Virus record (IMG/VR): IMGVR_UViG_3300037882_001770
Location: 62,001-126,000 of that record
Length of the DNA stretch: 64,000 bases
Direction: 5' to 3' (one strand)
The notes under the pieces were generated by a model, which had not been told where the DNA came from, did no database searches, and was given only the letters and a program-made list of their open reading frames with translations. The position numbers were made by a program, and so were the translations under genes. Below are positions 6,075-20,370 of the stretch, one piece after another; position 1 is the stretch's first letter, and the number at the start of each line of letters is the position of its first letter.

Positions 6075-6503
6075 ATGGTATGGCTTTATGAACAAAAACA
6101 AATCGAAACACTACCCGAAGACTGTGTCGGTTTTGTCTATTTGATTACAAATAACATCACTGGCCGAAAGTATATTGGAAAAAAATTAGCAAAATTTAGT
6201 AAAACTTCATACAAAGTAGTAAAATTAAAGAACGGCAACAAAAAACGCAAGAAAATCAAAAGTAAAATAGATTCAGACTGGCAGCTATACTATGGCAGCA
6301 ACGATCAACTCAACAAAGACATTGCAGAGCTAGGCTCAGACAACTTCACAAGAGAAATATTATTTTATTGCAACTCAAAGGCATCCTGTAGTTACATAGA
6401 AGCTAGAGAACAATTTAATCATAGAGTATTAGAATCAGACGACTACTATAACGGACAGATTGTATGCCGTATACACGGTAGTCACATAAAAAATAAAATT
6501 TAG
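6075..6503 (+). CDS. Small GIY-YIG family nuclease
   Basis: GFVYLITNNITGRKYIGKK and YYGS...E...YN catalytic pattern; basic KLKNGNKKRKKIK insert; no NUMOD tail. Confidence 0.8.
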   Translation: MVWLYEQKQIETLPEDCVGFVYLITNNITGRKYIGKKLAKFSKTSYKVVKLKNGNKKRKKIKSKIDSDWQLYYGSNDQLNKDIAELGSDNFTREILFYCNSKASCSYIEAREQFNHRVLESDDYYNGQIVCRIHGSHIKNKI

Positions 6504-6944: not shown

Positions 6945-7457
6945 ATGAAAACCCTAAGAGAAATGATGGATTTAATCGAATCTGCTCAAACAGTAGCAGA
7001 ATTCGCACCAAGCGGCATTTATAAACCGCCTGTGATTCCTCGTGAACCTGGTAAGGATCCGTTTGAAGATGATCCCCGTAGCACAACTGTATCCAAAGTT
7101 CAACAACTATTAGACGCCGGCAAGAGTGTATTTGTATTGTTACCGGGTGCTAGAGGTCGTGCAATTGGCACACAAATTGGCGACGATCACTCTTGGTTAA
7201 ATGTTCAATACAAAGGCTGGAAAGATCCTAAGACTCGCAGTAACGCTCGATTAACAGTAAATCTAAAAGCCGACGACGATTCTTCACTAACGCTAACTCC
7301 GGGTAGTCAATTCACTGACAATAAAGATCGCCCATTTGACTATACTTTATCCGGTGAGGCTAAAACCAGCGGTCGCGGATTATTTGAAGTCGAGTTAGAA
7401 GAAGAAATATCCGACGATGCTGTGCGTCGTGTGGAACAACTCGCTCAGTATAAATAA
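6945..7457 (+). CDS. Hypothetical protein, possible internal head protein
   Basis: N-terminus MKTLREMMDLIES resembles a T4 capsid-targeting sequence; TAAATA late promoter 7 nt upstream. Confidence 0.5.
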   Translation: MKTLREMMDLIESAQTVAEFAPSGIYKPPVIPREPGKDPFEDDPRSTTVSKVQQLLDAGKSVFVLLPGARGRAIGTQIGDDHSWLNVQYKGWKDPKTRSNARLTVNLKADDDSSLTLTPGSQFTDNKDRPFDYTLSGEAKTSGRGLFEVELEEEISDDAVRRVEQLAQYK

Positions 7458-7516
7458 AGGTGTAGTTCGCGGGACGGCAATCCCCAACTACTCTAACGCT
7501 TTGAAGGAGCATCAGC
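7449..7516 (+). promoter_or_regulatory. Late promoter plus structured leader of GIY-YIG homing endonuclease
   Basis: TATAAATA, then stems TAGTT/AACTA, GGGA/TCCC and GCT/AGC (the last around the SD); same architecture at 48721-48789. Confidence 0.75.
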
Positions 7517-8092
7517 TTGAAACATATTTACAATAAACTTAATCCCCCATCTGGATTCTACATCTACGCTTATATTAGAGAAAACGGAACACCTTACTAT
7601 ATCGGCAAAGGCAAGGGTATACGAGCCTGGGTAAGTCATGCTAACAAAGGCAAAGGAGCTCATACACCCAAAGACAAATCAAGAATTATAGTTTGTGAAT
7701 CTAATTTAACAGAAATAGGTGCCTTTGCGTTAGAGCGTAGATACATTCGTTGGTATGGACGCAAAGATCTAGGCACAGGTATTTTACTAAACAAAACAGA
7801 CGGTGGCGAAGGCACAGCTAATACCATTAGAACCGTATCGGAAGAAACTAAAATAAAAATTGGATCTGCTAATAAGGGCAGAGTTCAGACCGAAGAAACA
7901 CGAGCTAAACGAAGTGCGTCTCTCAAAGGAAGAAAGCCTTCAGAAGAATCAAACATTAAGCGTGGAGCAAAAGCAAGAGGTAGAGTTCTTGGCCCACAGT
8001 CAGAAGAACGAAAAGCTAAAACAAGTCTTTTAATTAAACAATGGTGGGCGGAACGAAAAGCGTTAGAATTGATCGGGCCAGTCGCGAAATAA
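7517..8092 (+). mobile_element. Free-standing GIY-YIG homing endonuclease with NUMOD3-type repeats
   Basis: [30 protein letters not shown] and [26 protein letters not shown] repeats; TTG start behind AAGGAG. Confidence 0.85.
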
Positions 8093-8398
8093 CGCATGCT
8101 GGATGTCACCTGCTACGAATTGATTGAAGCTCTTGTGTTTAACTTCAAGCTCGCCCTCTAAAGGTGCTACTCGCTTAAAGGCTTCATCCATCTGAGCCAT
8201 GTTTTTAAATTCCATCAAAATCATCCATTCGGGAAGATCCGCTACAGATCGAAAACCCATTTTGCATCTGGTAATTCTGTATGATTCCATTTTGCCTTCT
8301 GAAATCAAATGATCAAAGAAACTTTTCATTCCGTTGACCCATTCTAAATCAGAGATGTCGCCTTCTTTGTTTGCCCAAATTGTGTATAAGTCTGCCAT
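8063..8398 (-). CDS. DUF6614-like protein
   Basis: Pattern YTIWAN...YRITRCKMG...[10 protein letters not shown]...ALFRDWPD recognised from memory. Confidence 0.55.
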
Positions 8399-8832
8399 TA
8401 TTGTAGTGTCCCTAAAATTTCAAAGCCTTTGAGGCCTTGTTTGTACAAGTGTGCTTGGTCAAGATACAAGTATTTGAAACCACGTTCTCTATAGATAGCA
8501 CACTCTGTTTTTAAACTTTCTATGCCTAGTCTAGTCTTTGGATTATGGTAGGTCCATGCAAACTGACTGGCTAGAACGTTTTCCCTGTCGTAGCGTTTCA
8601 TCAAACTAAACGCTACCAATTGCCCTTCTTCGTAATATCCAATTACATCAGTATCGAGATCTGTAAACTGACTGTCAAAAAGTGGCATTACGCTTGCAAA
8701 GTGTTTGTAGATACAATAGGTTCTGTAGATATCTTGTAGTTGTGCAATGTTGGGTTCGTGTAGATATTTCCAGTCAACCTGCGGTTGATATGTAGTTTCT
8801 TCCAATCGTATTCTAGCAAATTGATAAGTCAT
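8398..8832 (-). CDS. GNAT-fold protein resembling the C-terminal domain of arginyl/leucyl-tRNA-protein transferases (ATE1/Bpt)
   Basis: YRTYCIYKH...VIGYYEEGQLVAFS...RLGIESLKTECAIYRERGFKYLYL parallels ATE_C motifs. Confidence 0.55.
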   Translation of the reverse strand: MTYQFARIRLEETTYQPQVDWKYLHEPNIAQLQDIYRTYCIYKHFASVMPLFDSQFTDLDTDVIGYYEEGQLVAFSLMKRYDRENVLASQFAWTYHNPKTRLGIESLKTECAIYRERGFKYLYLDQAHLYKQGLKGFEILGTLQ

Positions 8833-9332
8833 CTGCGTGGATCTTCTCTATGGTGGAACAGCATTTCTAAATATTCCTCCGGCCAAGTATCATAAAATCC
8901 TTTGGCTCCCATGACTTTTGCTTTGTCATTTAGGTCACTTAGGCTTTGAACCAATGCTAGTGCGTATGTTCCTTGATTCATGCAAACACCATTAACCATT
9001 TCCGAATCGTCTGGGTGATCTGCTAATGCCAGTAAATTGTTGCGAACCAAAAACTGTTCATTGAGGTTGTTGATGGTTGTGTTAAATTGGTTGGCGGCAT
9101 AATGATGCCCTTCGTAGACCACAATAACTACGCTTTTGTTTATGCCGTTACGACTAATTTCCGCCAAGTCGGAACCCAAATCTTTGCCAAGTCTTACTTC
9201 AAAGTCACGTTCCAGTCTGGCTTTACGAGCATACGGACAAGGCGGCCACCCACCCAGTGCTGGATTTTTAACTTCTACAAAATCCACAAGCCAGCGTTCA
9301 ATATCTAATTTTACAGTATCTAAGTTTAACAT
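8829..9332 (-). CDS. DUF1415-like protein
   Basis: IERWLVDFV...WPPCPYA...ADHP motif. Confidence 0.55.
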   Translation of the reverse strand: MLNLDTVKLDIERWLVDFVEVKNPALGGWPPCPYARKARLERDFEVRLGKDLGSDLAEISRNGINKSVVIVVYEGHHYAANQFNTTINNLNEQFLVRNNLLALADHPDDSEMVNGVCMNQGTYALALVQSLSDLNDKAKVMGAKGFYDTWPEEYLEMLFHHREDPRR

Positions 9333-9544
9333 TAAAAGAAAGGTAATCCTGATTTTTTTGTTGTTTCTAGATTGTCTTTGACCAACTGACTAATTACAGA
9401 TCTTTCGCTAGTGCTGAGTTGCATGGCTTGATCGTAGGTTATTCCACCTCTCATATACCAACACATGGTCAACGCCTCCTTACGTATGTCTACAGTTTCT
9501 TTTTCCATCTGATCAACCATCTTGGAAATTTGATCAGAGTTCAA
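9332..9544 (-). CDS. Baseplate hub assembly protein, gp51-like
   Basis: 70 aa, WYMRGGITYDQAMQL...ER motif, follows the gp26-like gene. Confidence 0.6.
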   Translation of the reverse strand: MNSDQISKMVDQMEKETVDIRKEALTMCWYMRGGITYDQAMQLSTSERSVISQLVKDNLETTKKSGLPFF

Positions 9545-9546
9545 GA

Positions 9547-10386
9547 TTAGGAGGCGGGCCCGAAAAAACTGGACATATCCAATGTTACTGTTTGTTCGTA
9601 TTCGTGTTTACACTCAGGGCAAGTTATGTTGATTGGCTGTAACTCACCGCTGGATTTGATATCAATAATATGATCTCTGATCTTGTTAAACAAAGTGCGA
9701 TCACAATTTTTCAAAAGTTCTTCAATGTATTCGGGTTCGGTTACCATGGACTGTGGTGTCTTAACAGCGGATATGCTTTGTGCCAATGCCTTGACTGTGA
9801 TTTCGGTCACTCGTTTAAGGGCTGCACTCAACGCTGACATTTTTTCAGTGTCAGGCACATCCGTATCGGGCAACACCTGCAATAGCTTTTGCTGTTCAAA
9901 TTGCAGTTGATTGTTGTCATTGAGATTTTTGTAGGTCATGGGTCTAAAGTAGATTTCCATGTCACCTGATTTGATTGTTTTGGAATAGTCGGGCGCCCGC
10001 ATGCGATCTAACACACTGCGCAAGTCTAGCACATGCTCGCATTCGTGTTGGCATTTTGGACATCTTGTGCCAAAATCCATGCTATGGCCGTAACTAGCAA
10101 TTCGTATAGCTACTAACAAGGTATCCACATCCATGGCAGGTGTAGCCCAGGCATCTTTGACGGACGGAATACAGCTCTCAATGGCATTAACTGTAGCCTG
10201 TCCGTTGTACAACGCATCCGGTGTGCGATAGTTAATTTCGTCGATTGCAGTCATGGGCAACACCGGCACTTCGCCGTTGGTTGGCATTTCCAATGCGCCA
10301 GGCGGATAAAACTGCCCTTGGCTGGGTAAACGTATATAAATCGACGGTTGTCTAAAATATTGTTGTAAAGGGTTGTTTGCGCTCAT
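9547..10386 (-). CDS. Baseplate hub subunit, gp26-like
   Basis: NPLQQYFRQP..YIRLPS, MTAIDE...LLVAIRIASYG, two CxxC motifs (CPKC, CPEC). Confidence 0.75.
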   Translation of the reverse strand: MSANNPLQQYFRQPSIYIRLPSQGQFYPPGALEMPTNGEVPVLPMTAIDEINYRTPDALYNGQATVNAIESCIPSVKDAWATPAMDVDTLLVAIRIASYGHSMDFGTRCPKCQHECEHVLDLRSVLDRMRAPDYSKTIKSGDMEIYFRPMTYKNLNDNNQLQFEQQKLLQVLPDTDVPDTEKMSALSAALKRVTEITVKALAQSISAVKTPQSMVTEPEYIEELLKNCDRTLFNKIRDHIIDIKSSGELQPINITCPECKHEYEQTVTLDMSSFFGPAS

Positions 10387-10410
10387 TTTTTACCTCGGTA
10401 AATAGTAATT

Positions 10411-12618
10411 ATGGCAGACCAATTCGACCCCCAACAATTTCAAGAAGCGTTAGAAGCCTACGAAAACGAAATACGTACTCTGGGCAAGGCCACGGCCGAA
10501 ACAAGAGCTGCATTCCAAGACGCCAAAGCGGCAATAAGACAGCACCAAGCACAAGTGGATGCATCCTGGAAAAAATTAGGAACAAGCGCCACCGACCTGA
10601 CAAAAGGTCTGTACAAAGGCGAAAAAGGTGTTGGTGTTTTTGGAGATGCAGTCGAAACTGCTGGAACTGCGTTACAGACACTAATACTGTTGATACCGGG
10701 CATTGGAATTGCAGCCAAGGCGGCAGCTTTTGCTATTGGCGCCTTTGCTAAGGGTGTTAACGCAGCTGCAAAACAGGGCGATCAACTTTATAAAACCTAT
10801 CAGGATCTAAGCAAAGCCGGCGCAACAACATCTGGCGGTATCCAAGATGTCTTTAGCAACATGCAGAAGTTTGGATATGGCCTCGAGGAACTGGATAAAA
10901 TGGTTTCGTTGGTGTCGGCTAATGCCGAAACCTTGGCCAAATTCAGTTTAACAGCCGGCGAAGGTGCCAGCGCATTTGCCCAAGGCATGCAACAGCTACA
11001 ACGAGATCAGAGTCTACGTGAACTGGGCAAAACCACAGACGATATCAATAATGCTGGCGCCGCATACATTAGACAGCAGGTAGCACTGGGCAGAAATCAA
11101 CGAGACATTGGAGATTCACTCAACAAGACCACTAGAGCTTATATTTTAGAACTGGATCATTTACAGCGCCTGACAGGTAAGAGTGCAGAACAGTTACAAA
11201 AAGAACAAGACGAAGCTCTTGCCGAAGATGCGTACAATCAAGTCATGTCCGAGTTGCAAGATCGTGCCGCCCAAGGCGATGCGGCAGCCGCAGCTCAGAT
11301 AGAAAAAATCAAATCAGTCATGGCAAACATATCGCCTGACTTGCGTAAAGAACTAGCACTCAGTATTGGTGGTGATGTAAGTGCCGCACAAAAATTAATG
11401 ATGTCAGCACCTAGCTTGCTGGGCAACGTGATGAATGAAAGCAAGGGCACAATTGATACCTTGCGTGAAGCTGGAAAAGATCTAACTAGAACCGCAGATG
11501 TGTTTGGTAAAGGTGCCAAAGTTGGTGCGTACGACAGAGAAATTTTTGGCACACTCAAAGATGCTCGAGTGTTTGGCAAGGCACTGGAAAATATTGAAGA
11601 ACGTGATATTGCTGCCAAGAAAAATGCCCACGTTATTGACGATTCAACCAAGTCCATAACCGAAACGCAAATAGCACAAATGAACAGCAGAGATGCTCTG
11701 CAAGGGTTTGTACAACTTGGGGTTGCTCCGGCCACTGCTGCCCTGGGAGGCCTAGCATCAGCAGTTGATGATGTGACCAGTATGTTACCGGGCGCCAAGT
11801 CCACTCCGGGCAAAGGAATGAATACTCCTGGATACGGTGCACAAGGTACCGGCACTAGAGGTGGCAGTGTCGGAAGCATGGCCGCTGGAGCAGCCACAGG
11901 CGCAGTAGTTGGATCAGTTGTTCCAGTTATTGGAACCGGTATTGGTGCAGCCATTGGCGCAGCCGCTGGATACCTTGGATACGGTGCATTTGGTGGCACA
12001 TCAGACAAGCCCGAGGATTACTTAAAATTTGGTGGGCAAAGCGGAAGCAAGGAAGCGTTTGGCAAACTAAACCCAGACATTCAGAAAAGTTTGCTGGCCG
12101 CCGGCAAACAGTACAAAGACATCACAGGCAACATGTTGACCGTTAACAGCGCCTTCCGAGACAGCGAAAAACAAAAAGAGCTGTATGACGCATGGATAGC
12201 CCGTGGCAAAACTGGCATGCCGGTGGCGCCCCCAGGCAGAAGCTCGCACGAAACCGGGCAAGCTGTGGACATTGAACAAGGCAAAAACGATCGCCAGGCG
12301 ATTTCGGCACTTAATGCAGCAGGTTTGTTCCAGACGGTGGCCAACGATCCGGTACACTTTAGCAAAACCAGCGGATACAAATTTGGCGGTATTGCAACCG
12401 GTCCCAGCAGCGGCTACCAGACTCTGTTGCATGGCACAGAAGCTGTGGTGCCCTTACCAGACGGCAAAACAATTCCAGTAGAAATACCCGGATTTACAAC
12501 CAATCTGACAGACCAAACTAGTTTAATGACGCAACAGCTTGACAAGTTAGACGAGCTGGTTAGAACTATGCAAACTCAAGTTAGTGTCAGCACTAAGATA
12601 TTACAACATACACAATAA
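10411..12618 (+). CDS. Tape-measure-like tail protein with C-terminal peptidase M15 (VanY-like) domain
   Basis: Ala/Gly-rich helical N-terminus; SAFR...Q...APPGRSSHETGQAVDI...DPVHF zinc-peptidase motifs; GGIATGP...LHGTEAVVPL tail. Confidence 0.7.
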   Translation: MADQFDPQQFQEALEAYENEIRTLGKATAETRAAFQDAKAAIRQHQAQVDASWKKLGTSATDLTKGLYKGEKGVGVFGDAVETAGTALQTLILLIPGIGIAAKAAAFAIGAFAKGVNAAAKQGDQLYKTYQDLSKAGATTSGGIQDVFSNMQKFGYGLEELDKMVSLVSANAETLAKFSLTAGEGASAFAQGMQQLQRDQSLRELGKTTDDINNAGAAYIRQQVALGRNQRDIGDSLNKTTRAYILELDHLQRLTGKSAEQLQKEQDEALAEDAYNQVMSELQDRAAQGDAAAAAQIEKIKSVMANISPDLRKELALSIGGDVSAAQKLMMSAPSLLGNVMNESKGTIDTLREAGKDLTRTADVFGKGAKVGAYDREIFGTLKDARVFGKALENIEERDIAAKKNAHVIDDSTKSITETQIAQMNSRDALQGFVQLGVAPATAALGGLASAVDDVTSMLPGAKSTPGKGMNTPGYGAQGTGTRGGSVGSMAAGAATGAVVGSVVPVIGTGIGAAIGAAAGYLGYGAFGGTSDKPEDYLKFGGQSGSKEAFGKLNPDIQKSLLAAGKQYKDITGNMLTVNSAFRDSEKQKELYDAWIARGKTGMPVAPPGRSSHETGQAVDIEQGKNDRQAISALNAAGLFQTVANDPVHFSKTSGYKFGGIATGPSSGYQTLLHGTEAVVPLPDGKTIPVEIPGFTTNLTDQTSLMTQQLDKLDELVRTMQTQVSVSTKILQHTQ

Positions 12619-18775: not shown

Positions 18776-19077
18776 TGGCAAACCCACCTCCACCATATGA
18801 AAACATAACAGGCATCAGTCGCACTGTCATGAAAGACAATGCACAAGAGACTGTTACTAACTATAACGGAAATGCTCGTCCGGGCGAAATGACTGTAAAT
18901 CCAAACACCAGTCAAATTTATATAGGCAATACTAACGGCAATTTAAATTTAGTAATCAGTAGCAACGGATCAAATTTGTTTGTGGGCAATGCCAGAGTAT
19001 CAAATACAGTTCCGGCGGGTTTTTATCAAATGTATTACAACCCCACGACCGGTGAAGTAATTTATTACCAGCCCTAA
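18775..19077 (+). CDS. Hypothetical virion protein
   Basis: 100 aa with ARPGEMTVNPNTSQIYIG motif, a type seen in fibre/decoration proteins. Confidence 0.5.
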   Translation: MANPPPPYENITGISRTVMKDNAQETVTNYNGNARPGEMTVNPNTSQIYIGNTNGNLNLVISSNGSNLFVGNARVSNTVPAGFYQMYYNPTTGEVIYYQP

Positions 19078-20225
19078 ATCTTAAACCAACTTAGATATTG
19101 ATGTATTTTGTCAGTAACTGACTGCCAATCGCCCATTACGGGTTGCCGAAACAGTCTAGCACTAGGATACCACGGACTTGAATCTCGACCAAGCAACCAT
19201 CTCCAATCGACTGCATAGTTGTTGAGCATGATCCAGGTAGGGCGACCGAGGGCGCCACTTAAGTGTGACACCGCAGTATCAACTCCAACTACCACATCAA
19301 GATTTTGAATCAATGCTGCTGTGTCGGCCCAACTGCCAATAGTACCTGGAAACAAACTAACCCCAAGGTTAGCTAATTGATCAGACTCGTTGCTGTTGCA
19401 ATCAATTTGCAAATTGATCCATTCGTAGCTTGGATTTTTTTCAATCAGTTGTAGCATGCAATTAAACGGCAATGCCTTGTGTTGATTAATCCACGAATCT
19501 TTTCGGCCACTCCAACAAAAACCAACTCGTAATCGTTTTTTTGCACCAAGATGATCTTGCCAAGCCTTGGCTAAATTTGCATCAGGTGTGATATACTGCA
19601 AAGGAGCCAACAAGTTGTGTAACGTTACTCCTAGCACACCAGGAATACTCATAATAGGAGTCCAATAATCAAAATGTTCAGGAGTATCGCCGGGTTTTAT
19701 GAACTGCTTGACAATCGGGCTTCCGTGTATAAGAGGCACCATGCTAGGATCTAAATCCATTATAACATTTGCGCCCAACGCCTGCAAAGATAATAAAAAT
19801 CTTAAGAATTGTATATTGTCACCGTGGCCCTGCTCACCAATTACCAGTATGGTTTTTTCATTTAGGTCCTGTCCGGCCCACCTGGGTTGATCATATGCTG
19901 GTAAAAGTCCTGCTAGGTGCTCGTACTGCCATCGAGACTCATATGCCGGCCAGCCGTTTGCATAATCTCCTTGCAACAAATAACAAACAGCCAAATTAAA
20001 TCTTGCAGTAATGTTGTCAGGAGCCAACTGAATAGCTCGTTGTAAAAACGGAACAGCTCCAACCGGGTCGCCGACTTCTCTCAACACATTTCCATAATTA
20101 TTAAACGCACCAAAAGACAATCTATCCTGAGTGAGTGCCTGTGCGTAACAGGTCAGTGCTTGCTCGGGGCGGTGATCGGCCCTTGCTTGGTTTCCTTGCT
20201 CTATCAGAAGTTCAATATCATTCAT
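19074..20225 (-). CDS. TPR-repeat plus GT-B (GT9-like) glycosyltransferase
   Basis: N-terminal TPRs (AFNNYGNVLRE, ARFNLAVCYL), EQGHGDNIQF, LDVVVGVDTAVSHLSGALGRP; start reassigned to MNDIELL. Confidence 0.8.
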   Translation of the reverse strand: MNDIELLIEQGNQARADHRPEQALTCYAQALTQDRLSFGAFNNYGNVLREVGDPVGAVPFLQRAIQLAPDNITARFNLAVCYLLQGDYANGWPAYESRWQYEHLAGLLPAYDQPRWAGQDLNEKTILVIGEQGHGDNIQFLRFLLSLQALGANVIMDLDPSMVPLIHGSPIVKQFIKPGDTPEHFDYWTPIMSIPGVLGVTLHNLLAPLQYITPDANLAKAWQDHLGAKKRLRVGFCWSGRKDSWINQHKALPFNCMLQLIEKNPSYEWINLQIDCNSNESDQLANLGVSLFPGTIGSWADTAALIQNLDVVVGVDTAVSHLSGALGRPTWIMLNNYAVDWRWLLGRDSSPWYPSARLFRQPVMGDWQSVTDKIHQYLSWFKI

Positions 20226-20271
20226 TGCTATATTTAATTTGATGCGCCGACCCTGTAGATTATCTGGTTGC

Positions 20272-20370
20272 CATAAATACTTGTCAACGTAATACTGCGT
20301 TTTATGCGGGTAATAAACCCCCCGCGTAGCGGCTAGAACCCGCATGGGACTTCTTTAAGGAGAAAACAAA
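20272..20370 (+). promoter_or_regulatory. Late promoter and GC-rich structured 5' leader
   Basis: CATAAATA at 20272; ATGCGGGT (20304) can pair with CCCGCGT (20321) or ACCCGCAT (20338); AAGGAG SD. Confidence 0.5.

What the first reader, a model, noticed from the sequence alone, without database searches (positions are those of the whole stretch)
8063..10386. ATE/Bpt-like aminoacyl-transferase triad translationally coupled to baseplate hub genes
Seen: gp26-like, gp51-like, DUF1415-like, GNAT and DUF6614-like genes are chained by a 2-nt gap and TAATG/ATGA overlaps. The GNAT protein parallels the ATE1/Bpt C-terminal domain but lacks the Cys-containing N-terminal domain, while the neighbouring DUF1415-like protein carries a CPYA motif. 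Established: ATE1 and Bpt transfer Arg or Leu from tRNA to protein N-termini, creating N-degrons. Inference: a split or minimal tRNA-dependent transferase that modifies virion or host proteins or manipulates ClpS-dependent proteolysis.
Basis: partly seen in the sequence, partly recalled or inferred. Interest (0 to 1): 0.68.

Follow-up and report, generated by a model that had tools for sequence, protein, structure and literature searches.

The report
Truncated phage ATE/Bpt-like transferase cassette
A clade of giant freshwater phages carries a conserved three-gene cassette built around a stripped-down relative of the enzymes that tag protein N-termini with an amino acid for degradation, which may let the phage steer protein breakdown, though its real substrate is still unknown.

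Summary
The five minus-strand genes and their junctions are real. The 144-aa protein (p144) is a truncated relative of the ATE1/Bpt aminoacyl-tRNA-protein transferases, not an ordinary acetyltransferase. Its family profile hits only ATE1 in the PDB (E 4e-8), and longer viral relatives pass Pfam ATE_C. The catalytic Tyr-Lys pair, the Phe/Trp flank and the acidic pocket residue (Glu110 = KlAte1 Glu277) are conserved. It lacks ATE_N, the C-terminal tail and the basic tRNA-binding helix.

The cassette p167-p144-DUF6614 is kept in all 80 related viral loci examined. The p167/p144 and p144/DUF6614 adjacencies also recur in other arrangements. The link to baseplate genes is only positional: Atu_ph07 and Phosso have the hub pair without the cassette.

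p167 is not an ATE_N substitute. It is DUF6875/DUF1415-like, and its best solved match is the thiolate-haem hydroxylase AglA. Its Cys is invariant, and it occurs alone in other phages.

The phage also encodes ClpS, a ClpA-like ATPase, ClpX and two ClpP. Two long viral relatives sit beside a Clp_N ATPase or near ClpS.

Best reading (about 0.4): a phage mini aminoacyl (probably arginyl) transferase feeding an N-degron route. A guanidino small-molecule pathway is a serious rival.

The parts
9547..10386 (-). gp26-like baseplate hub subunit (279 aa). It is the first gene of the minus-strand unit and the only one with a clear GAGG ribosome-binding site. It diverges from the 735-aa VanY-domain gene across a 24-bp spacer.
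   Evidence: PF12322 T4_baseplate E 2.9e-17; phrog_150 baseplate hub E 2.8e-17. Sequence read. Homologous hub genes in Atu_ph07 and Phosso.
9332..9544 (-). p70, a 70-aa ORF with a TTG start, 2 nt after the gp26-like stop. It is a hub-associated small protein. The 'gp51-like' label rests on position only.
   Evidence: No Pfam, NCBIfam or PHROG match. tblastn finds full-length homologues (31-34% identity) directly after the hub gene in Atu_ph07 and Phosso. Kept in 75 related loci, median 63% identity.
8829..9332 (-). p167, a 167-aa alpha/beta sandwich protein with an invariant Cys32 in the PPCPYA motif. It is DUF6875/DUF1415-like and a candidate thiolate-ligated cofactor (haem?) protein.
8398..8832 (-). 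p144, a 144-aa single GNAT domain. It is a truncated viral member of the ATE_C (ATE1/Bpt) lineage. Key residues: Tyr130-Lys131, Phe91/Trp93, Ser106, Glu110.
8063..8398 (-). p111, a 111-aa DUF6614 protein and the last gene of the unit. Its 3' end overlaps the convergent NUMOD3 endonuclease-like gene (7517-8092) by 30 nt.
   Evidence: PF20319 E 3.8e-21. Median 87% identity in 79 related loci, as conserved as the portal. Adjacent to p144 homologues in L083, L091 and L116. Only a sub-threshold PDB lead: the coproheme decarboxylase N-domain, E 0.068.

Best explanation
p144 is a stripped-down, virus-specific offshoot of the Bpt/ATE1 aminoacyl-transferase family.

Shown:
- It is one complete GNAT domain.
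- It keeps the residues that experiments on KlAte1 identify as essential. Tyr130-Lys131 match Tyr303-Lys304. Glu110 matches Glu277, the negative charge that holds the arginine side chain; this position is Gln in the Leu-transferring Bpt. Phe91/Trp93 match the hydrophobic flank.
- It has lost the ATE_N acceptor domain, the C-terminal tail and the basic helix. All three are still present in 225-268-aa viral relatives.
- It is the centre of a conserved accessory cassette: p167 (Cys protein of the DUF6875/DUF1415 type), then p144, then DUF6614.
- In a clade of about 320-350-kb freshwater jumbo phages of the Rak2/PA5oct/Atu_ph07 kind, this cassette has been added to the 3' end of the baseplate-hub gene pair. 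It is read from the same strand with overlapping stop/start codons.

Inferred:
- p144 transfers a basic amino acid, most likely Arg, from an activated ester donor onto a primary amine. By family precedent the donor is host aminoacyl-tRNA, since the phage has no tRNA genes.
- The most likely acceptors are protein N-termini. That would create or edit N-degrons that the phage's own ClpS, ClpA-like ATPase and ClpP act on.
- p167 and DUF6614 are needed partners that supply what the truncated enzyme lost (acceptor or donor handling), or that chemically process the product.

The position next to baseplate genes is a matter of genome architecture, not function.
For: Homology to ATE1/Bpt:
- ATE_C is the only Pfam family hit by p144 and its relatives.
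- The profile of 45 family members finds only ATE1 chains in the PDB, at E 3.8e-8 to 1.3e-7.
- Alignment with two bacterial ATE_C proteins shows invariant R7, F45, L102, G103, Y123, Y130 and K131, and near-invariant E110.
- E is present in 40/45, K131 in 42/45, W93 in 44/45 and F91 in 42/45 family members.

Experimental meaning of these residues (PMC9351520; bioRxiv 10.1101/2022.07.20.500667):
- K304A and Y303F are inactive.
- E277K is inactive, while E277D behaves like wild type.

Fold: pLDDT 95.7. The best matches are aa-tRNA-dependent enzymes.

Cassette conservation:
- The cassette is kept in 80 of 80 loci.
- A p167-p144 pair with an ATGA overlap occurs in a different neighbourhood.
- p144-DUF6614 occurs in L083, L091 and L116.
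- A p167 homologue lies convergent with long form P0275.

N-degron context:
- The genome encodes ClpS (77 bits; 61 bits to E. coli ClpS), a 759-aa ClpA-like ATPase, ClpX and two ClpP.
- ClpS is present in 4 of 4 near-complete genomes of the clade.
- Long form P0336 lies directly after a Clp_N-AAA ATPase.
- Long form P0342 lies 3.5 kb from a ClpS gene.

No tRNA genes are found in the window or the genome.
Against: - p144 lacks the ATE_N pocket that reads the acceptor N-terminus (PMC9351520).
- It lacks the basic helix that binds the tRNA acceptor stem in every characterised aa-tRNA transferase. The segment between R7 and Y39 is 31 aa with net charge about -2. In long forms it is 41-47 aa with net charge +2 to +10.
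- Only two of the four Arg-pocket positions are ATE1-like (S106, E110). A88 and L122 are Bpt-like.
- The two Bacteroidota ATE_C proteins also carry Glu at this position. Glu therefore may not be specific for Arg.
- ClpS is also present in Atu_ph07 and Phosso, which lack any p144 relative. Co-occurrence with Clp genes is therefore not specific.
- The partners look like small-molecule enzymes: p167 resembles AglA, and an amidinotransferase is inserted in the cassette in some relatives.
- There is no evidence of expression or of protein-protein contact (one search gave no verdict).
Confidence: 0.4

Rival explanations
1. Small-molecule or peptide pathway. The cassette makes or edits an arginine- or guanidino-containing metabolite. 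It might instead decorate a non-protein amine such as a cell-wall precursor, a lipid, a polyamine or a modified DNA base. In this reading p144 forms an amide bond on a small acceptor, as Sba18/Sbb17, FemX and MprF do. p167 acts as a thiolate-haem oxygenase of the AglA type. DUF6614 acts as a small alpha+beta-barrel helper enzyme.
For: - p144 is a bare GNAT with no protein-acceptor domain.
- The best Foldseek hit is the aa-tRNA-dependent peptide synthase Sba18 (E 3e-6). The best VIA hits are MprF, L-PGS and FemX.
- p167's only standout solved match is AglA, a guanidine N-hydroxylase with a Cys-ligated haem (PMC12866846). The Cys of p167 is invariant.
- In 8-9 of 80 related loci, an L-arginine:glycine amidinotransferase-like gene sits inside the cassette at either of two junctions. 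It hits PDB 2jdx at E 3.9e-11 and keeps the His and Cys motifs.
- p111 has a sub-threshold resemblance to a haem enzyme domain.
Against: - No characterised ATE_C-family enzyme acts on small molecules.
- The amidinotransferase-like family is multi-copy and sits at varying positions in these genomes. Its presence in the cassette may reflect mobility rather than function.
- p167 homologues occur alone in small podophages.
Confidence: 0.25
2. Split ATE. p167 replaces the missing Cys-containing ATE_N domain and docks on p144 to rebuild a two-domain aminoacyl-tRNA-protein transferase.
For: - The p167-p144 adjacency with an ATGA overlap is tight in 76 of 80 loci, and also in a distant context.
- The p167-associated subfamily is the one that lost the basic segment.
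- p167 carries an invariant Cys.
Against: - No ATE_N similarity is found at E<=10.
- The fold is unrelated, being DUF6875/DUF1415/AglA-like.
- p167 is acidic (pI 5.2), which is unlike a tRNA-binding part.
- A p167 homologue accompanies long form P0275, which keeps its own N-terminal region.
- p167 homologues exist in phages with no ATE_C-like gene.
- The complex prediction gave no verdict, so it is evidence for neither side.
Confidence: 0.1
3. Ordinary acyl-CoA N-acetyltransferase, for example one that modifies a virion or host protein or an antibiotic-like compound.
For: - p144 lacks the basic tRNA-binding helix.
Against: - p144 hits no acetyltransferase Pfam family. One relative hits Acetyltransf_6 at E 0.046 against ATE_C at 1.1e-4.
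- The family profile finds only ATE1.
- The Q/R-x-x-G-x-G/A CoA-pyrophosphate motif is absent. The stretch P98-K-T-R-L-G-I-E-S does not fit it (sequence).
- The Lys that stabilises the tetrahedral intermediate in FemX and ATE1 is invariant.
Confidence: 0.07
4. The cassette acts on the virion or baseplate. It would modify or help assemble hub proteins with which it is co-transcribed.
For: - The cassette shares a strand with gp26 and p70, with overlapping codons. No internal terminator or promoter stands out above chance.
- The arrangement is conserved throughout the clade.
Against: - Atu_ph07 and Phosso have the hub pair but no cassette.
- A distant p167-p144 pair lies beside Thy1, and other relatives lie in unrelated contexts.
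- Homing-endonuclease-like genes insert exactly at the p70/p167 boundary in 7 loci. This marks the boundary as a seam between two units.
Confidence: 0.05

Closest known systems
Bacterial Bpt (Leu-tRNA-protein transferase; ATE_N + ATE_C; Leu/N-degron pathway)
   Same: The GNAT core is homologous. Alignment with two Bacteroidota ATE_C proteins shows the invariant R7, L102-G103, Y123 and Y130-K131 motifs. Long viral relatives align along their whole length, including the N-terminal 'NGW' element and the C-terminal tail. The genome context contains ClpS and ClpA/ClpP, as in bacteria.
   Different: p144 is 144 aa, against about 235-260 aa. It has no ATE_N, no C-terminal tail and no basic helix. The pocket residue is Glu, where V. 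vulnificus Bpt has Gln189 (PMC9351520). It is encoded by a phage and flanked by p167 and DUF6614.
Eukaryotic ATE1 arginyltransferase (PDB 7wfx, 7tif, 8e3s)
   Same: It is the only significant PDB sequence match (E 3.8e-8). The equivalents of Tyr303, Lys304, Glu277, Ser273, Phe258 and Trp260 are conserved.
   Different: ATE1 is about 500 aa. [quoted passage not shown] Two pocket positions (A88, L122) are not ATE1-like.
Other aa-tRNA-dependent GNAT transferases (MprF/aaPGS, FemX, Aat L/F-transferase, Sba18/Sbb17)
   Different: All of them are two-domain or tandem-GNAT enzymes, and p144 aligns only to their C-terminal GNAT. There is no detectable sequence similarity to them.
AglA and the YqcI/YcgG family (thiolate-haem guanidine N-hydroxylases), for p167
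   Different: There is no sequence-level match. p167 is 167 aa against 243 aa, so it lacks the long substrate-gating loops. Haem binding is untested. The Pfam affinity is to DUF6875/DUF1415, not PF08892.
ClpS and ClpP genes of jumbo phages (Iyer et al. 2021, PMC7824862)
   Same: The genome carries ClpS and true ClpP, as already described for some jumbo phages.
   Different: That survey mentions no aminoacyl transferase. Here a Bpt/ATE-like gene is present in the same genome, and in other viral contigs it lies next to Clp genes.

Membership tests
ATE1/Bpt aminoacyl-tRNA-protein transferases | ATE_C GNAT domain (PF04377) | tested here: met
   The window protein scores 20.5 bits, E 7.9e-4, below the 25-bit cut-off. 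Relatives score 27-35 bits, above the cut-off. The family profile hits only ATE1 in the PDB, E 3.8e-8.
ATE1/Bpt aminoacyl-tRNA-protein transferases | ATE_N domain (PF04376) with a Cys cluster and the basic pocket that reads the acidic N-terminal residue | tested here: not met
   There is no ATE_N match anywhere in the 317-kb genome at E<=10. p144 starts just before the invariant Arg that follows ATE_N in full-length proteins.
ATE1/Bpt aminoacyl-tRNA-protein transferases | Catalytic Tyr-Lys pair (KlAte1 Tyr303/Lys304; FemX Lys305) | tested here: met
   Y130-K131 is invariant across viral and bacterial homologues and present in 43/45 and 42/45 family members. Its essentiality is shown in PMC9351520.
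ATE1/Bpt aminoacyl-tRNA-protein transferases | Acidic residue at the bottom of the donor pocket (Arg-specific ATE1: Glu/Asp277; Leu-specific Bpt: Gln189) | tested here: met
   E110 aligns with ScATE1 D277 and KlAte1 E277. E is present in 40 of 45 members. The other pocket positions are mixed: S106 is ATE1-like, while A88 and L122 are Bpt-like.
ATE1/Bpt aminoacyl-tRNA-protein transferases | Positively charged helix that binds the tRNA acceptor stem | tested here: not met
   The segment between R7 and Y39 is 31 aa with K+R 3, D+E 5. Long viral forms have 41-47 aa with K+R 8-16. This is a sequence-based test only.
ATE1/Bpt aminoacyl-tRNA-protein transferases | Transfer of an amino acid from aa-tRNA to a protein N-terminus | not testable with these tools
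   This needs an in vitro assay.
Acyl-CoA-dependent GNAT acetyltransferases | Match to an acetyltransferase family, and the Q/R-x-x-G-x-G/A CoA-binding motif after strand 4 | tested here: not met
   p144 hits no acetyltransferase Pfam family at E<=1. The motif is absent from residues 94-106 (sequence). Structure alone cannot exclude this family.
DUF1415 / DUF6875 (p167) | Pfam model match | tested here: inconclusive
   The window protein has no hit, and DUF1415 has no hit in the genome at E<=10. Nine of 19 family members hit DUF6875, best E 7.4e-4. Atlas clusters carrying DUF6875/DUF1415 match at TM 0.83-0.84, feature score 0.94.
YqcI/YcgG thiolate-haem hydroxylases (p167) | AglA-type sandwich fold with a Cys axial ligand; haem binding | tested here: inconclusive
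DUF6614 (p111) | Pfam model match | tested here: met
   PF20319 E 3.8e-21, 75.7 bits, covering 107 of 116 model positions.
T4 gp26 baseplate hub | Pfam T4_baseplate match | tested here: met
   PF12322 E 2.9e-17; phrog_150.
T4 gp51 hub assembly catalyst (p70) | Sequence similarity to gp51 | tested here: not met
   There is no family match in Pfam, NCBIfam or PHROGs. Only the position after the hub gene is analogous.
Bacterial Leu/N-degron pathway (system level) | ClpS N-recognin, a ClpA-type unfoldase with a Clp_N domain, ClpP peptidase, and an aminoacyl transferase | tested here: inconclusive
   The phage genome has ClpS (77 bits), a 759-aa Clp_N+AAA+AAA_2+D2-small ATPase, and two ClpP of 269 and 98 bits. 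p144 is the only candidate transferase, and its activity is unproven. ClpS also occurs in relatives without p144.

The most novel reading that the evidence does not exclude
The cassette is a new three-protein chemistry, not a cut-down Bpt. p144 would install an arginine on an amine (a protein N-terminus or a small acceptor) without the usual tRNA-binding helix, perhaps from a non-tRNA donor handed over by a partner. p167, a minimal thiolate-haem protein of the AglA type, would then N-hydroxylate or otherwise oxidise the guanidino group. DUF6614 would assist. The result would be a previously unknown modified N-terminal residue or guanidino metabolite made by phages during infection.
Probability: 0.1. 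Interest if true: 0.85.

Novelty: new variant of a known kind. Interest (0 to 1): 0.62.

Why it matters
ATE1 and Bpt are the enzymes that write N-degrons. In the literature searched here, none has been described in a virus. None is known to work as a bare 144-aa GNAT domain.

The family is abundant. About 2,800 clusters at 90% identity turned up in metagenomes, and at least 576 IMG/VR contigs carry a relative.

It sits in jumbo phages that carry their own ClpS, ClpA-like ATPase, ClpX and ClpP. If it is active, it would give phages a way to mark host or phage proteins for timed destruction. It would also define the minimal catalytic unit of this enzyme class.

If the acceptor turns out to be a small molecule, it would extend the ATE_C lineage to metabolite chemistry. 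It would also give a first functional handle on three families of unknown function: DUF6875/DUF1415, DUF6614 and phrog_28122.

Tried and rejected
Searches that found nothing:
- blastn of the region, and tblastn of p144 and p111, against 50,697 cultured phage records: no match.
- phmmer of p144 alone against the PDB: nothing. Only the family profile worked.
- NCBIfam: nothing useful for any of the five proteins.
- DUF1415 and ATE_N models against the whole phage genome at E<=10: nothing.
- Foldseek PDB and a PDB profile search for p167: nothing significant.
- Pfam found nothing for the inserted 381-aa ORF, although phmmer against the PDB identified it.
- tRNA scan of the window and genome: none, apart from one doubtful permuted tmRNA call.
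- Literature searches for phage arginyltransferase, DUF1415 and ATE_C found nothing relevant.

Jobs that gave no verdict or could not run:
- Complex prediction of p167 with p144 scored 0.00 in both runs. The verdict was 'no answer', so it counts for neither side.
It was repeated with the closer set A3.

Expression:
- The T4 late-promoter motif TATAAATA gave 4 matches against 3.0 expected, with none before the operon.
- Sigma-70 and terminator scans of 7400-11000 were not above shuffles.
- No public run holds more than 7% of the sampled words and none is RNA, so read laying was not used and there is no expression evidence.

Ideas considered and dropped:
- A functional link to the baseplate was dropped, because cultured relatives have the hub pair without the cassette.
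- The specific co-occurrence of ClpS with p144 as an argument was weakened, because ClpS is also in Atu_ph07 and Phosso, which lack p144.
- The amidinotransferase insertion as proof of an arginine pathway was weakened, because the family is multi-copy and mobile in these genomes.


Full report
WHAT IS THERE

The window is bases 62,001-126,000 of a 317,493-bp linear IMG/VR virus record, estimated 89% complete. Its major capsid protein is 62-67% identical to those of Sinorhizobium phage Phosso, Vibrio phage 2.275.O, Pseudomonas phage PA5oct and Rak2-like Escherichia phages. It is therefore a jumbo myovirus of that group, with T4-type portal and capsid genes.

Five ORFs lie head to tail on the minus strand:
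- 9547-10386 (279 aa)
- 9332-9544 (70 aa, TTG start)
- 8829-9332 (167 aa, 'p167')
- 8398-8832 (144 aa, 'p144')
- 8063-8398 (111 aa, 'p111')

The junctions are a 2-nt gap, TAATG, ATGA and TAATG. Only the first gene has an obvious GAGG ribosome-binding site. This fits translational coupling but does not prove it. No promoter or terminator signal inside the unit exceeds chance.

THE FIVE PROTEINS

- The 279-aa protein is a gp26-type baseplate hub subunit (PF12322, E 2.9e-17; phrog_150).
- The 70-aa protein matches no family. Its only homologues are small ORFs that directly follow the hub gene in Atu_ph07 and Phosso. 'gp51-like' is therefore an analogy of position only.
- p111 is a clear DUF6614 member (E 3.8e-21).
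- p167 and p144 are treated below.

P144 IS AN ATE/BPT RELATIVE, NOT AN ACETYLTRANSFERASE

Sequence evidence:
- p144 alone hits only ATE_C, and below the curated cut-off (20.5 against 25 bits).
- The exhaustive representative search found 119 relatives.
- The 225-268-aa relatives hit ATE_C above the cut-off, and several short ones do too. No acetyltransferase family competes.
- A profile of 45 family members finds only ATE1 chains in the PDB, at E 3.8e-8 to 1.3e-7, with nothing else below E 1.

Structural evidence:
- The AlphaFold2 model is confident (pLDDT 95.7) and is one complete GNAT domain.
- Foldseek ranks the aa-tRNA-dependent peptide synthase Sba18, KlAte1 and MprF first.
- CoA-dependent tandem GNATs (VipF, N-myristoyltransferase) are within 1-2 Z units. 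Structure alone therefore does not decide the matter.

Residue evidence is more telling. For KlAte1, K304A and Y303F are inactive. E277K is inactive, while E277D behaves like wild type. The Arg pocket is Ser255/Ser273/Glu277/Tyr289, against Ala/Ala/Gln/Leu in the Leu-transferring Bpt (PMC9351520). ScATE1 adds the Phe258/Trp260 flank (bioRxiv 10.1101/2022.07.20.500667). Through the HMM alignment, these positions map onto p144 as follows:
- Tyr303-Lys304 map to Y130-K131.
- Glu277 maps to E110.
- Ser273 maps to S106.
- Ser255 maps to A88.
- Tyr289 maps to L122.
- The Phe258/Trp260 flank maps to F91/W93.

In the family, K131 is kept in 42/45, Y130 in 43/45, E110 in 40/45, W93 in 44/45 and F91 in 42/45. 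Y130-K131 is invariant when two bacterial ATE_C proteins are added.

WHAT P144 LACKS

- The alignment with long viral forms and bacterial ATE_C proteins shows that p144 begins just before the invariant Arg that follows the ATE_N region. It ends before the C-terminal 'W-G-x-x-W-S-x-D' tail.
- ATE_N is found nowhere in the genome at E<=10.
- The basic segment between R7 and Y39 is missing. In long forms it is 41-47 aa with 8-16 Lys/Arg. In all short forms it is 30-40 aa (31 in p144) with net charge -6 to +2, about -2 in p144.
- This segment corresponds to the positively charged helix that binds the tRNA acceptor stem in ATE1, FemX and the PG synthases (PMC9351520, PMC10115844).

Use of tRNA as donor is therefore inferred from family membership and from the conserved catalytic residues. 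It is not secure.

P167

- The AlphaFold2 model is confident (pLDDT 95.0). Foldseek finds nothing in the PDB.
- Atlas neighbours with TM 0.83-0.84 carry DUF6875 and DUF1415. Nine of 19 family members hit DUF6875 weakly.
- Cys32 of the CPYA motif is invariant down to 26% identity, in HMO-2011, CRP-345 and S-SCSM2R.

p167 is thus a DUF6875/DUF1415-type protein with a functionally essential Cys. It is not an ATE_N analogue.

IS THE TRIAD REAL?

- At least 576 IMG/VR contigs encode a p144 relative.
- In the best 80, every contig that reaches far enough has the order gp26, p70, p167, p144, p111.
- The p167-p144 ATGA overlap is kept in 76 of 80.
- p111 (median 87% identity) is as conserved as the portal (85%). 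It is far more conserved than gp26 (57%) or p167 (56%).
- p144's 76% is inflated, because the loci were chosen by similarity to p144.

The adjacencies also recur outside this clade:
- A 40%-identical p144 with a 29%-identical p167 upstream, again with an ATGA overlap, but beside Thy1 and without DUF6614.
- p167-p144-DUF6614 on two short contigs, one of them (L091) from a marine sample.
- A p167 homologue convergent with the long form P0275, and a p144-like gene divergent from DUF6614.

Against strict interdependence, p167 homologues occur in phages that have no ATE_C-like gene.

LINK TO THE BASEPLATE

In Atu_ph07 and Phosso the hub gene and the p70 homologue form a two-gene unit, in the same place between the gp46/47-like nuclease genes and the portal. 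In Phosso the synteny is exact. There is no cassette.

In seven related loci a homing-endonuclease-like gene sits exactly at the p70/p167 junction.

The cassette is therefore an add-on to the end of the hub unit.

LINK TO CLP PROTEOLYSIS

The same phage genome encodes the following, all outside the window:
- ClpS (77 bits; 61 bits to E. coli ClpS), next to Cpn60- and Hsp20-like genes.
- ClpX.
- A 759-aa ATPase with Clp_N, AAA, AAA_lid_9, AAA_2 and D2-small domains.
- Two ClpP, at 269 and 98 bits.

ClpS is present in four of four near-complete genomes of the clade.

Of six long-form contexts examined, one (seen on two contigs) lies directly after a Clp_N-AAA ATPase. Another lies 3.5 kb from a ClpS gene on a 45-kb contig that also carries a UvsW-like helicase gene.

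ClpS and ClpP in jumbo phages are already described (PMC7824862). A transferase is not.

The caveat is that Atu_ph07 and Phosso have ClpS but no p144 relative.

AN ARGININE THEME

In 8-9 of the 80 loci a 381-415-aa gene sits inside the cassette, in the same direction and with abutting codons. It lies either between p167 and p144 or between p144 and p111, and the copies at the two positions are 59% identical.

It is an L-arginine:glycine amidinotransferase relative. It hits 2jdx at E 3.9e-11, and also HsvA, StrB1 and SxtG. The His and C-terminal His-Cys motifs are invariant.

Together with the Glu pocket of p144 and the AglA-like fold of p167, this makes three independent pointers to arginine or guanidino chemistry.

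The amidinotransferase-like family is, however, multi-copy and variably placed in these genomes. Its insertion may reflect mobility.

CONCLUSION

- Right: there is a minimal ATE/Bpt-type enzyme in a conserved triad, in a phage that has its own ClpS pathway.
- Not supported: that p167 is the missing half.
- Not supported: that the baseplate genes are functionally involved.

I put 0.4 on an aminoacyl (probably arginyl) transferase acting on protein N-termini in a Clp-linked route. I put 0.25 on a small-molecule guanidino pathway. The rest is spread over the other rivals.

No evidence of expression or of binding could be obtained.

Noticed in passing
L008:1272-2417; L024, L069, L071 (between p167 and p144); L009, L061, L065, L067 (between p144 and p111); G000:16866-17882, outside the window: An L-arginine:glycine amidinotransferase-like gene (381-415 aa; PDB 2jdx E 3.9e-11) is inserted inside the cassette at either of two junctions in some relatives. 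The family is multi-copy in the clade's genomes. The focal genome's own 339-aa paralogue lies about 45 kb upstream of the window and did not show the C-terminal His-Cys motif in a simple pattern check.
   Followed up: partly
Outside the window, genome coordinates G000:C1 about 173.9-178.6 kb, 198.8-202.9 kb and 256.6-258.9 kb: The phage carries a large proteostasis set. ClpX, a Cpn60-like gene, Hsp20 and ClpS lie in one neighbourhood. Two ClpP genes lie next to a radical-SAM/SPASM protein. A 759-aa ClpA-like two-ring ATPase lies elsewhere.
   Followed up: partly
L086:3225-5765 and L087; L108:1178-5783: Long-form viral ATE_C proteins (254-260 aa) lie directly after a 499-aa Clp_N+AAA ATPase and a 69-aa ORF, or 3.5 kb from a 95-aa ClpS gene. 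These contigs come from other metagenomes and look viral (DNA polymerase III alpha, RNase T, UvsW).
   Followed up: partly
window 6075-6503 (+), 7517-8092 (+); L003, L049, L051, L052, L055, L058, L059 between p70 and p167: Homing-endonuclease-like genes surround the cassette: a SegE-type GIY-YIG gene (E 1.7e-32) and a NUMOD3 protein whose 3' end overlaps p111 by 30 nt. A 227-242-aa phrog_314-like ORF is inserted at the p70/p167 seam in seven relatives.
   Followed up: partly
window 10411-12618 (+): A 735-aa protein with a VanY D-Ala-D-Ala carboxypeptidase domain (E 4.6e-9) starts only 24 bp from the divergent gp26-like gene and precedes the portal. Each gene's promoter must therefore lie inside the other gene. 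It is poorly conserved (25-58% identity) among relatives.
   Followed up: no
L114, L115 (contigs of 183 kb and 148 kb in a Haliscomenobacter MAG); L116 (Legionella MAG); L117 (Bacteroidales MAG): p111, p144 and p167 homologues at 75-92% identity lie on contigs binned into freshwater bacterial MAGs. These are most likely phage contigs that were mis-binned. The two large Haliscomenobacter-bin contigs sum to about one phage genome and are at best a weak host hint. The same MAG has two bacterial ATE_C proteins without N-terminal cysteines (L118, L120).
   Followed up: partly
window 19074-20345 (-): A 423-aa protein with TPR repeats and a weak heptosyltransferase (Glyco_transf_9) match lies on the minus strand among capsid-region genes.
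   Followed up: no
G000:C1:314202-314640, outside the window: ARAGORN calls a permuted tmRNA-like gene with a 28-residue tag. It finds no tRNA genes in the whole 317-kb genome, which is unusual for a jumbo phage. The record is only about 89% complete.
   Followed up: no
Literature: bioRxiv 10.1101/2024.04.14.589459: An ORF of phage DruSM1 predicted to belong to DUF6614 was reported to counter Druantia type I defence. This is the only functional mention of the family that I found. Its relation to p111 was not tested.
   Followed up: no
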